Positions 1 through 799 of a stretch of DNA of 35,825 bases are shown here, one piece after another (the stretch's first letter is position 1; every line of letters starts with the position of its first letter). The stretch is from Prasinococcaceae sp. CCMP 1430 (lineage: Eukaryota > Plantae > Prasinodermophyta): the NCBI GenBank assembly GCA_013416795.1, contig RQSC01000598.1, positions 51,636-87,460 on the forward strand. Reading direction: 5' to 3'. Below the pieces are notes generated by a model. It worked only from the letters and a program-made list of their open reading frames with translations. It did not search any database and was not told the DNA's origin. The translations under genes and the position numbers were made by a program.

Positions 1-799
1 CGAGAACGTGACAGCCGTCGCAAGCTGCGCGAGTCCCCCGCGGTCGCCGAGCACCGCGCGCGCGTGGCGCACATGCACCGGCGCATGGCGGCGCTGGGCA
101 CGCGGGCGGAGCGCGCCAAGAACGCGCACGACCCGAGCGTGTACCCCGTCTTCCTTCGGCGCGAGGGGGGGATGCGGCCGGCGAGCGCGTGCGGGAAGAC
201 AGGCGCGGCGCAGGGAGCCAACAGCGCCAGGCCAAGCAGTGCGCGGCCGAGCAGCGCCAGGCCGAGCAGTGCGAGGCCGAGCAGCGCCAGGCCGAGCAGC
301 GCCAGGCCGAACAGTGCGCGGCCGAGCAGCGCCAGGCCGAGCAGCGCCAGGCCGAGCGGCGCTAGGCAGGGTGGCGTGCGCGTCATCGAGTCCGCCGATC
401 CCTACAGGGACTTCAAGCGCTCCATGCTCGACACCATCGTCGGGCAGAGAATATACCAGGTGCGCGTCTCCACGCGCGCGCGCGTGTGCGCAGTGCCCAT
501 GCGCGTGCGTGTGCGCGTGCCTGCGTGCGTGCGTGCCTCCTCGCACGCACACACATCTACACGCGCGCGCGCGCGTGCGTACCCAAAAACACGCACACGC
601 ATACGCACACGCACAAACACGCCGCGTCAGGCGCCTTCGCCGCCCGCTCACGCCGGGCTTTCTGCTGACTGCCGGCGCGCAGGAGGACCTGCTCACCGAG
701 CTCTTCAACAGCTACCTGCGGCTCAACTCGAGCGCGCACAGGGCGACCATCCAGCGCGCCATCGACGACGTCAGGGCCGAGCTCGACCTCTCCGTGTGA
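1..799 (+). CDS. OVATE-domain (DUF623/OFP-like) protein, 5' end outside the window; join(<1..459,683..799)
   Basis: Frame 1 is open from base 1. Phase-0 intron 460-682 (CAG|GTGCGC donor, CTGAC branch, GCAG acceptor). The spliced C-terminus VRVIESADPYRDFKRSMLDTIVGQRIYQ-EDLLTELFNSYLRLNSSAHRATIQRAIDDVRAEL follows the OVATE pattern (S-x-DPY-x-DF-x-x-SM...L-x-EL-x-x-x-YL-x-LN...H...I...D). Confidence 0.8.
   Translation, partial: ENVTAVASCASPPRSPSTARAWRTCTGAWRRWARGRSAPRTRTTRACTPSSFGARGGCGRRARAGRQARRREPTAPGQAVRGRAAPGRAVRGRAAPGRAAPGRTVRGRAAPGRAAPGRAALGRVACASSSPPIPTGTSSAPCSTPSSGREYTRCASPRARACAQCPCACVCACLRACVPPRTHTHLHARARVRTQKHAHAYAHAQTRRVRRLRRPLTPGFLLTAGAQEDLLTELFNSYLRLNSSAHRATIQRAIDDVRAELDLSV
220..369 (+). 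repeat. Coding 15-bp tandem repeat, (S/N)SARP x9 plus one degenerate unit
   Basis: Units such as AGCAGCGCCAGGCCG repeat with synonymous codon variation from 220 to 369. Confidence 0.95.

What the first reader, a model, noticed from the sequence alone, without database searches (positions are those of the whole stretch)
379..799. OVATE (OFP) domain in an apparently algal genome
Seen: the two-exon C-terminus ESADPYRDFKRSMLDTIV...EDLLTELFNSYLRLNSSAHRATIQRAIDDV reproduces the hallmark residues and the C-terminal position of the OVATE domain. It is visible only after splicing. Established: OVATE family proteins control organ shape in land plants, interact with TRM proteins and microtubules, and are usually described as land-plant or streptophyte specific. 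Inference: the other genes here look prasinophyte-like, so this could push the origin of the domain much deeper or reveal a pre-land-plant function.
Basis: partly seen in the sequence, partly recalled or inferred. Interest (0 to 1): 0.78.

Follow-up and report, generated by a model that had tools for sequence, protein, structure and literature searches.

The report
Ancient OVATE-domain gene in marine green alga
A marine green picoalga (probably Prasinoderma) has a real, spliced gene ending in the OVATE domain, which papers call specific to land plants or streptophytes, so the domain probably dates to the first green plants.

Summary
Window 388-459 and 683-796 (+) each match a complementary half of Pfam Ovate (PF04844). 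They are split by a 223-nt GT..AG intron, and one seawater metatranscriptome contig shows it removed exactly at 459|683. Environmental homologues without this intron are colinear across the junction and score 55 bits (cut-off 25).

The window holds only the 3' part of a gene of about four exons and 330 aa. Its whole layout is conserved: N-terminal motifs, a long helix, an ERKKN..D...YP motif, a disordered RPxSA-rich linker and a C-terminal OVATE domain. I found this layout in Chlorokybus, Mesostigma, three chlorophytes (Pycnococcus, Bryopsis, Ostreobium), a fern (Psilotum) and many Tara Oceans contigs.

Published surveys score OFP as 0 in Prasinoderma coloniale and in chlorophytes, and place its origin at Streptophyta or land plants. 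Most chlorophyte members fall below the Pfam cut-off, which probably explains the misses.

The domain therefore most likely predates the split of the green lineages. It is not unique to this genome. I infer the function from plant OFPs: a protein-binding adaptor. I could not read the organism's name from the tools.

The parts
1..459 (+). 3' part of the penultimate coding exon (exon 3 of about 4). The reading frame is open from base 1, so the gene continues upstream of the window.
   Evidence: Frame 1 has no stop from base 1 to 459. Window 11-4255 aligns to Tara scaffold L001 1055-5289 at 97.0%. On L001, conserved upstream coding segments lie at 145-299, 495-665 and 927-1488.
52..165 (+). Conserved N-terminal family motif: H..RVAHMHRRM....ERAKN..D...YP..LRRE, the end of a long predicted helix plus the ERKKN..D...YP motif.
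   Evidence: It aligns with the same motif in the Pycnococcus, Bryopsis, Ostreobium, Mesostigma, Chlorokybus and Ancoracysta proteins. In the homologue P0003 the helix at residues 30-73 has pLDDT above 90.
222..367 (+). In-frame 15-nt tandem repeat (9.7 copies) encoding (SARPS)n. It is part of a disordered Ser/Ala/Arg/Pro linker with repeated RPxS sites.
   Evidence: Tandem Repeats Finder. There are 9 ARP units in the window and 8 in L001, an in-frame copy-number difference. The linker is predicted disordered in P0003. RPxSA-type linkers occur in all family members.
388..459 (+). First half of the OVATE domain (ESADPYRDFKRSMLDTIVGQRIYQ; helix 1).
   Evidence: Pfam PF04844 profile 1-22, 24.8 bits, E 2.3e-5. 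The protein is identical in L001.
460..682 (+). Intron of 223 nt with GT..AG ends, phase 0 and microsatellite-like GCGTGT/ACACGC content.
   Evidence: A spliced metatranscriptome contig skips it. It is 231 nt long in L001 and L002, which is why prokaryote-style gene callers read through it there. Homologues have no residues at this position.
683..799 (+). Last exon: second half of the OVATE domain (helices 2 and 3), five more residues and the TGA stop at 797-799.
   Evidence: Pfam PF04844 profile 26-56, 22.3 bits, E 1.3e-4. There are 0 differences in 117 nt against L001. The C-terminal ending ..VRAELDLSV is shared with the algal-type family.

Best explanation
Window 1-799 holds the last two exons of an expressed gene for an OVATE family protein of a marine, non-streptophyte green picoalga, probably Prasinoderma. 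The full protein is about 330 aa from four exons, as reconstructed on the near-identical Tara scaffold L001. It belongs to an old, previously undescribed full-length family found across green plants. The family has N-terminal motifs (P-D-E-R-x-L-G-G-R; E-V-R-E-T-Y-R-R-V; R-L-S-x-N-R) and a long alpha-helix ending in ERKKN..D...YP. A disordered basic linker rich in RPxS(A) repeats follows, then a C-terminal three-helix OVATE domain.

Shown: the domain, the splice, the expression, the conserved layout and the taxonomic spread.

Inferred from plant OFPs: the OVATE domain is a protein-binding module. Its conserved acidic face (the DPYxDF motif is intact here) would grip a basic motif on a partner, either a TRM-like microtubule or centrosome protein or a TALE homeodomain protein, and so change where that partner sits in the cell. 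The N-terminal helix would bind something else or dimerise, and the RPxS repeats would be kinase-regulated. I put the identity and ancestry part at about 0.9 and the mechanism part at about 0.35; the single confidence figure given is for the identity and ancestry part weighed down a little by the open mechanism.
For: Pfam gives complementary half-domain hits on the two exons. The intron-free homologues P0002 and P0003 score 55 bits over the full-length domain. The same-species read-through ORFs P0001 and P0273 score 38 bits.

A marine metatranscriptome contig is spliced at 459|683. Exon 4 is identical between the window and L001 and the OVATE half of exon 3 encodes an identical protein, whereas the intron carries mismatches and an 8-nt length difference.

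An exhaustive phmmer search with the domain gave 358 hits at E <= 1e-3. Among the named hits are Chlorokybus, Mesostigma, Pycnococcus provasolii, Bryopsis sp., Ostreobium quekettii and Psilotum nudum. The full-length alignment shows shared N-terminal motifs and a shared C-terminal ending.

A tree of 95 columns separates 13 algal-type rows, including both Prasinoderma-type rows and the Psilotum protein, from 21 classical plant OFPs with support 98/94. Within the algal-type group there is a chlorophyte clade (95/97) and a Mesostigma+Chlorokybus pair (94/84), and the Prasinoderma type lies outside both.

AlphaFold2 gives the same three-helix pattern at pLDDT about 90 in the algal homologue (helices 168-182, 188-201, 204-220) and in a classical plant-type OFP (24-39, 44-57, 60-82).

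For function: acidic residues of the OFP domain bind the TRM M8 motif and cause relocalisation (PMC6226536). OFPs bind TALE homeodomain proteins (PMC4814488).
Against: The only RNA evidence for the splice is one low-depth environmental contig. The runs of the organism itself (X1, X2; their RNA status is a guess) hold the unspliced form.

The upstream exons are inferred from a 97%-identical scaffold, not from the window. One proposed intron would need a GC donor. Window bases 1-10 do not align to that scaffold.

I could not read the organism's name because the sources of the window's own proteins are masked.

No partner protein was identified. Published tables list no KNOX or BEL homeodomain genes in P. 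coloniale, and I did not search for TRM or TON1. The three-helix fold has no informative structural relative.
Confidence: 0.8

Rival explanations
1. The gene is real but reached the Prasinoderma lineage by horizontal transfer from a streptophyte, so it says nothing about the ancestor of green plants.
For: The Prasinoderma-type domain is closer to the plant consensus (55 bits) than those of Mesostigma and Chlorokybus (35-36 bits) or the chlorophytes (14-28 bits or none). Its place within the algal-type group of the tree is unresolved.
Against: It shares the whole N-terminal layout with the chlorophyte and early streptophyte members. It sits outside the classical plant OFP clade with support 98/94. 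Two Prasinoderma-type species about 27% apart in protein both carry it. Its GC content and microsatellite-like introns match the host DNA around it. No relative was found in viral contigs. Chlorophyte members exist independently.
Confidence: 0.08
2. The protein acts as plant AtOFP1 is described to act: a nuclear transcriptional repressor recruited to DNA by a transcription factor, rather than a relocalising adaptor of cytoskeletal or homeodomain partners.
For: Pfam and the review literature describe OFPs as transcription repressors (PMC4814488). The linker is strongly basic and could hold nuclear localisation signals.
Against: No repression motif or DNA-binding domain was detected. Published tables list none of the known TALE partners in P. 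coloniale. The conserved acidic DPYxDF face is the one shown to bind TRM proteins.
Confidence: 0.2
3. The match is a chance resemblance, or a decaying pseudogene, in GC-rich, ORF-rich DNA.
For: Each half alone is just under the Pfam cut-off of 25 bits. High-GC DNA gives long spurious ORFs on all frames. The organism's own runs show only the unspliced form.
Against: The two halves match independently and in order, with canonical splice signals and a spliced transcript. The protein is conserved at 71-73% in a second species and recognisable across phyla. Indels between strains are in frame in the coding part and out of frame only in the intron.
Confidence: 0.03
4. The contig is not from a prasinophyte-grade alga but from a streptophyte or a contaminant, so the distribution claim fails.
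For: I could not read the organism's name from any tool. The name Prasinoderma comes from earlier agents' notes.
Against: The DNA is found at 97% identity in Tara Oceans marine metagenomes and in seawater metatranscriptomes. The GC content of 68% fits the 69.8% published for P. coloniale. Independently of this contig, chlorophyte members exist.
Confidence: 0.03

Closest known systems
Land-plant OVATE family proteins (OFPs; tomato OVATE/SlOFP20, Arabidopsis AtOFP1-19; Pfam PF04844)
   Same: Both have a C-terminal domain of about 58 aa with the hallmark DPYxDF(K/R)xSM ... LxxLFxxYLxLN ... H motifs. The predicted three-helix pattern is the same. The rest of the protein is largely disordered.
   Different: The N-terminal part is unrelated to classical OFPs: there is no DNA_binding_2 domain, but there are the PDERxLGGR, ETYRRV, RLSxNR and ERKKN..D...YP motifs and a long helix. 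The domain sits at the very end and finishes with (K/R)xEL(D/E)(L/V). The domain tree places it outside the classical OFP clade (98/94). The host is a marine unicell without organs.
[quoted passage not shown]
   Same: The full-length layout is the same, motif for motif, and so are the size class of about 190-330 aa, the RPxSA linker and the terminal OVATE domain.
   Different: They are freshwater or subaerial streptophytes. Their domains score lower against Pfam (35-36 bits against 55). They pair with each other in the tree, apart from the Prasinoderma type.
Unnamed chlorophyte proteins: Pycnococcus provasolii XRB02538.1, Bryopsis sp. KO-2023 GMH34408.1 and Ostreobium quekettii EP00803_P009058
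   Same: They have the same N-terminal motifs and the same C-terminal domain position.
   Different: Their OVATE domains have lost the DPY motif and score 21-26 bits, at or below the Pfam cut-off. Domain surveys therefore do not count them. They form their own clade (95/97).

Membership tests
OVATE family protein (Pfam PF04844 Ovate) | A significant match to the PF04844 profile over the whole domain, above the gathering score of 25 bits. | tested here: met
The exon halves score 24.8 and 22.3 bits on profile 1-22 and 26-56. Public ORFs of the same species that hold both halves score 38.0-38.4 bits. The intron-free homologue at 71-73% identity scores 55.4 bits over profile 1-56.
OVATE family protein (Pfam PF04844 Ovate) | The domain lies at the C-terminus of the protein. 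| tested here: met
   The stop codon at 797-799 comes five residues after the end of the Pfam match.
OVATE family protein (Pfam PF04844 Ovate) | Hallmark residues: DP(Y/F)xDF(R/K)xSM, LxxLLxxFLxLN and the conserved H. These include the acidic residues needed for TRM binding. | tested here: met
   The window encodes DPYRDFKRSM ... LLTELFNSYLRLN..AH. 105 of 149 top hits carry DP[YF].DF[RK].SM, and so does the Prasinoderma type. The role of the acidic residues comes from PMC6226536. I could not map which exact residue equals tomato D280.
OVATE family protein (Pfam PF04844 Ovate) | The same fold as plant OFP domains. | tested here: inconclusive
   AlphaFold2 models of the homologue P0003 and of a plant-type OFP, P0133, both give three helices with matching boundaries at pLDDT about 90. 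The models were not superposed, the window's own protein was not folded, and no solved OVATE structure exists to compare with.
OVATE family protein (Pfam PF04844 Ovate) | Binds TALE homeodomain and/or TRM proteins and represses transcription or relocalises partners. | not testable with these tools
   This needs interaction and localisation assays.
Algal-type 'ETYRRV-ERKKN-OVATE' subfamily (defined here) | A long helix plus the H..N.YH..RR....S.TERKKN..D...YP..RR motif upstream of the linker. | tested here: met
   Window 52-165 encodes HRARVAHMHRRMAALGTRAERAKNAHDPSVYPVFLRRE, which aligns with all members.
Algal-type 'ETYRRV-ERKKN-OVATE' subfamily (defined here) | N-terminal PDERxLGGR and EVRETYRRV motifs. 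| tested here: inconclusive
   These lie outside the window. They are present on the 97%-identical scaffold L001 (YREVREMHRRV at 928-960..SVGGRMRIEEE at about 265-294) and, more clearly, in the sister species locus L007 (PRERCVGGRMRV, E 4e-5 in a small search). The exon joins there are inferred.

The most novel reading that the evidence does not exclude
The OVATE domain did not arise in streptophytes. [quoted passage not shown] The family may be older still if the Ancoracysta (Provora) transcript is genuine. This ancestral form survives in Prasinodermophyta, some Chlorophyta, Mesostigma, Chlorokybus and at least one fern, and the large land-plant OFP family derives from it. Its original job in unicells, possibly tying a basic-motif partner to the cytoskeleton or controlling a homeodomain factor, can now be tested.
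Probability: 0.6. Interest if true: 0.65.

Novelty: new member of a known kind. Interest (0 to 1): 0.55.

Why it matters
OFPs are a textbook "plant-specific" regulator family that controls organ and fruit shape through TRM/microtubule and TALE homeodomain partners. Current surveys place their origin in land plants or, at most, at the base of Streptophyta, and score Prasinoderma and all sampled chlorophytes as zero.

A well-preserved OVATE domain in a lineage that branches near the root of green plants, plus divergent chlorophyte members, moves the origin back to the green ancestor and implies many later losses. The conserved full-length layout gives a better search model than the 58-residue Pfam domain. 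It identifies a probable ancestral-type orthologue in a fern. It also offers a single-copy protein in unicells for asking what the OVATE domain did before there were organs to shape.

Finally, it is a concrete case where an intron through a short domain and a strict score cut-off produced a false "absent" in comparative tables.

Tried and rejected
1. Naming the organism. A word search with the window's thiolase returned the identical protein with environmental sources only. The other hits were about 65% identical across many groups and gave no placement. The sequencing-run search returned coded names.

2. A profile word search with the full-length family alignment was swamped by low-complexity candidates. 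It returned only five hits, none outside the lineages already found.

3. Fold searches were uninformative. Foldseek against PDB gave nothing at E <= 0.001. The ESM Atlas search by shape gave TM below 0.4. VIA-align wide gave a best Z of 5.8 to generic helical bundles. A PDB sequence search found nothing.

4. An Atlas search with the N-terminal 150 residues of the Pycnococcus protein gave no usable hit.

5. A viral-contig scan for the family found none.

6. MAFFT with each exon of L001 as its own short row misplaced exons 1 and 2. I replaced it with tblastn of family N-termini against L001 and L007.

7. P0158 is a 975-aa bacterial-type repeat protein with seven weak matches. I rejected it as a false positive on reading it.

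Full report
**What is in the window.**
On the + strand, frame 1 is open from base 1 to 459 and ends in ...VRVIESADPYRDFKRSMLDTIVGQRIYQ. It is followed by GTGCGC. After ...GCGCGCAG, frame 2 resumes at 683 with EDLLTELFNSYLRLNSSAHRATIQRAIDDVRAELDLSV and a TGA at 797-799.

I scanned each exon separately against Pfam. Window:370-459 matches Ovate (PF04844) profile positions 1-22 of 58 (24.8 bits, E 2.3e-5). Window:683-796 matches positions 26-56 (22.3 bits, E 1.3e-4). These are two independent hits to complementary, correctly ordered halves, with a canonical phase-0 GT..AG intron of 223 nt between them. All whole-domain tests used public proteins.

**Expression and splicing.**
Eight public runs hold parts of window 1-1300, and I laid four of them on it. 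A marine metatranscriptome (X5) has a 167-nt contig covering 380-456 and 680-769, skipping 223 nt. The cut can equally be placed at 459|683 with GT..AG ends, and there is one mismatch on each side. This is a single low-depth environmental contig.

Two runs of the organism itself (X1, X2; their RNA status is only a guess) hold the unspliced stretch with no mismatches. The depth spikes at 485-572 and 793-836 come from unrelated low-complexity contigs.

**Relatives that settle the junction.**
A word search with the exon-1 region returned three proteins. P0001 (441 aa, 100% identical over the query region) comes from two Tara Oceans scaffolds (L001, L002). L001 1055-5289 matches window 11-4255 at 97.0%. 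In these strains the intron is 231 nt, a multiple of three without a stop, so a prokaryote-style gene caller read straight through it.

P0002 (220 aa) and P0003 (225 aa) are 71-73% identical. They come from at least 29 marine contigs of a sister species with 71% GC. They have no intron at this site. They run ...HRVYEADRLAELFESYLRLNSS... in exact register with the window's two exons. They score 55.4 bits (E 6e-15) over profile 1-56, against a cut-off of 25. The same-species ORFs that hold both halves score 38 bits for the whole protein.

Between the window and L001, exon 4 has 0 differences in 117 nt, and the OVATE part of exon 3 encodes an identical protein. The intron has 5 mismatches and an 8-nt length difference. 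The only coding indel is one 15-nt repeat unit.

**The whole gene.**
The window holds only its 3' part. P0003 starts at a GTG chosen by the gene caller, so the real start must lie upstream.

On L001, conserved coding segments lie at:
- 145-299 (ATG at 145)
- 495-665
- 927-1488
- 1720-1836

Together they give about 330 aa. The first segment carries ..SVGGRMRIEEE.. The sister locus L007 carries PRERCVGGRMRV, which matches the PDERxLGGR start of the chlorophyte proteins (E 4e-5 and 3e-4 in a small search). These joins are inferred. One of them needs a GC donor. Window bases 1-10 do not align to L001, so the window's strain may differ just upstream.

**A conserved full-length family.**
An exhaustive phmmer search of 1.84 billion representatives with the domain of P0002 gave 358 hits at E <= 1e-3. 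Cluster look-ups named the following:

| Organism | Group | Protein |
|---|---|---|
| Chlorokybus atmophyticus | streptophyte alga | P0126 |
| Mesostigma viride | streptophyte alga | P0127 |
| Pycnococcus provasolii | chlorophyte | P0287, XRB02538.1 |
| Bryopsis sp. KO-2023 | chlorophyte | P0225, GMH34408.1 |
| Ostreobium quekettii | chlorophyte | P0147 |
| Psilotum nudum | fern | P0242, 736 aa |
| Ancoracysta twista | Provora | P0189 |

There were also several unnamed clusters from Tara and other ENA assemblies (P0200 with 12 members, P0152, P0230, P0142, P0125). Ordinary angiosperm OFPs were in the list too.

The algal proteins and the fern protein share the whole layout:
- PDERxLGGR
- EVRETYRRV
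- RLSxNR
- H..N.YH..RR....S.TERKKN..D...YP..RR
- a linker rich in RPxSA
- a terminal OVATE domain ending (K/R)xEL(D/E)(L/V)

Window 52-165 encodes the fourth motif, and 222-367 encodes nine SARPS units of the linker.

**Why surveys miss it.**
Pfam Ovate scores are as follows:

| Protein | Pfam Ovate score (bits) |
|---|---|
| Classical plant OFP (P0133) | 96 |
| Prasinoderma type (P0002, P0003) | 55 |
| Psilotum | 52 |
| Mesostigma, Chlorokybus | 36, 35 |
| P0125, P0200, Bryopsis | 29.5, 27.9, 25.8 |
| Ancoracysta, Pycnococcus, Ostreobium | 22.0, 21.5, 21.2 |
| P0230, P0142 | 20.1, 14.4 |
| P0152, P0307 | none |

Most chlorophyte members therefore sit below the cut-off of 25.

In the Prasinoderma species the domain is cut by an intron. 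If that intron is retained, as in the organism's own contigs, only 22 residues of the domain remain in frame. I infer that this is why published tables give OFP = 0 for P. coloniale. I could not see the official gene model.

**What the literature says.**
- Liu et al. 2014, as summarised in PMC4814488, found no OFPs in chlorophytes.
- PMC9490259 places the origin in the ancestors of land plants.
- A 2026 preprint calls them absent from Rhodophyta and Chlorophyta.
- The P. coloniale genome paper lists OFP = 0 for that alga and for all 27 algae compared (PMC7455551 supplement).
- TAPscan v4 lists 1 each for Chlorokybus and Mesostigma. It lists 0 for Prasinoderma, five chlorophytes, four Zygnematophyceae, Chara and Klebsormidium, and it places the gain at Streptophyta (PMC11712027 supplement).

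Full-text searches for OVATE or OFP with algal terms found no report outside streptophytes.

**Tree.**
I built a tree on 95 columns around the domain, with 34 rows, using IQ-TREE. One split (98/94) separates 13 algal-type rows from 21 classical plant OFPs. The 13 include both Prasinoderma-type rows, Psilotum P0242 and Ancoracysta. Inside the algal-type group the chlorophyte rows form a clade (95/97) and Mesostigma pairs with Chlorokybus (94/84). The Prasinoderma type lies outside both.

The alignment is short and several branches are long, so the deeper order is open. Even so, the gene is not nested among land-plant OFPs. This pattern, the shared layout, the host-like GC and introns, and the absence from viral contigs all favour vertical descent from the green ancestor over transfer.

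Two published topologies give different implications. On the Li et al. topology, Prasinodermophyta is sister to all other green plants, which implies loss in many chlorophytes and several streptophyte algae. On the TAPscan species tree, Prasinoderma is sister to streptophytes. There the chlorophyte members still require presence in the common ancestor.

**Structure and likely mechanism.**
AlphaFold2 on P0003 with a 36-row alignment gave three results:
- a confident long helix (residues 30-73, pLDDT above 90)
- a disordered linker (96-159)
- three helices for the OVATE domain (168-182, 188-201, 204-220; pLDDT about 90)

A plant-type OFP (P0133) gave helices in the same register (24-39, 44-57, 60-82). 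Structure searches found only generic helical bundles, and no OVATE structure is solved.

In plants, conserved acidic residues of this domain bind the basic M8 motif of TRM proteins and move the complex between cytoplasm and microtubules (PMC6226536). OFPs also bind KNOX and BELL homeodomain proteins. The DPYxDF motif is intact here.

My best reading is therefore a non-enzymatic adaptor. The OVATE domain would hold a basic-motif partner, the N-terminal helix would hold something else or dimerise, and the RPxS-rich linker would be a phosphorylation target. This is inference, at about 0.35. A classical nuclear repressor role is the main rival. Published tables list no KNOX or BEL genes in P. coloniale, and I did not test for TRM or TON1.

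**Organism.**
The tools mask the sources of the window's own proteins and code the run names, so I could not read the name. What I can show:
- GC is 68%, against 69.8% published for P. coloniale.
- Near-identical DNA occurs in Tara Oceans metagenomes and seawater metatranscriptomes.
- The gene's place in the tree is outside both the chlorophyte clade and the Mesostigma+Chlorokybus pair.

Earlier agents of this scan named the genome Prasinoderma coloniale. I use that as a lead only.

**Verdict.**
It is a new member of a known family in lineages where the family was reported absent, and it exposes a conserved ancestral layout. Interest is moderate (0.55).

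Noticed in passing
window 1-10: The first ten bases do not align to the 97%-identical Tara scaffold L001; the alignment starts at window 11 = L001 1055. The window reads ..RERDSRRK where L001 and P0273 read ..RRLSANRRRK. The window's strain may have an extra intron (ACAG at 11-14 could be an acceptor) or a variant just upstream.
   Followed up: partly
window 460-682; L001 1489-1719: The intron consists of GCGTGT/ACACGC microsatellites and differs in length between strains (223 against 231 nt). 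Where the length is a multiple of three, public gene callers produced read-through proteins (P0001, P0129, P0273). The same low-complexity sequence attracts very high metatranscriptome depth from unrelated contigs at 485-572 and 793-836.
   Followed up: yes
P0189 (EukProt EP00164, Ancoracysta twista transcript GFYU01000890): A complete member of the family, with all N-terminal motifs, an RPxSARP linker and a divergent OVATE domain (22 bits), sits in the transcriptome of a predatory protist of the Provora, outside green plants. It could be a contaminant, a transfer from prey, or a sign that the family is older than green plants.
   Followed up: partly
P0242 (EukProt EP00249, Psilotum nudum, 736 aa): A fern transcript keeps the algal-type layout (VEVRETFRRI, SLTERKKNPYDPALYPVFIRR, terminal OVATE at 52 bits) and groups with the algal type in the tree. 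Land plants may retain an ancestral-type OFP orthologue. Contamination of the transcriptome is not excluded.
   Followed up: partly
L013 223-957 (JGI metagenome 3300032723), protein P0141: An environmental 244-aa protein carries two tandem, divergent OVATE-like domains (..TSDPYGDFTRHVV.. and ..KLDPYELFAYDVV..), an arrangement I did not see in any named organism.
   Followed up: no
L001 295-500: The proposed first intron of the gene would have a GC rather than a GT donor (CAG|GCACGC ... ACACAG|G). It is supported only by the reading frame and by homology of the flanking segments.
   Followed up: partly
L007 1122-1160: In the sister species the upstream conserved ORF and the OVATE ORF are in the same frame, separated by one stop codon and 21 nt. 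The second conserved segment is in another frame. That gene must therefore also be spliced upstream, although it lacks the intron inside the OVATE domain.
   Followed up: partly
window 920-953 and 1088-1135: There is a (CCCAA)7 repeat and a (TG)24 repeat in the spacer between the OVATE gene and the next gene. That gene starts near 1322 and encodes a protein with a signal-peptide-like start.
   Followed up: no
window 14327-35060: Other genes on the window by Pfam: an HPP-family membrane protein (14327-16027 +), a CobW/CobW_C GTPase (16605-18509 -), a thiolase (19641-21590 +), SSRP1/FACT (22914-25139 +) and a full ABCA transporter (28422-33560 +). The long ORFs at 11566-13893 (-), 10188-11807 (+) and 33675-35060 (+) had no Pfam match.
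   Followed up: partly
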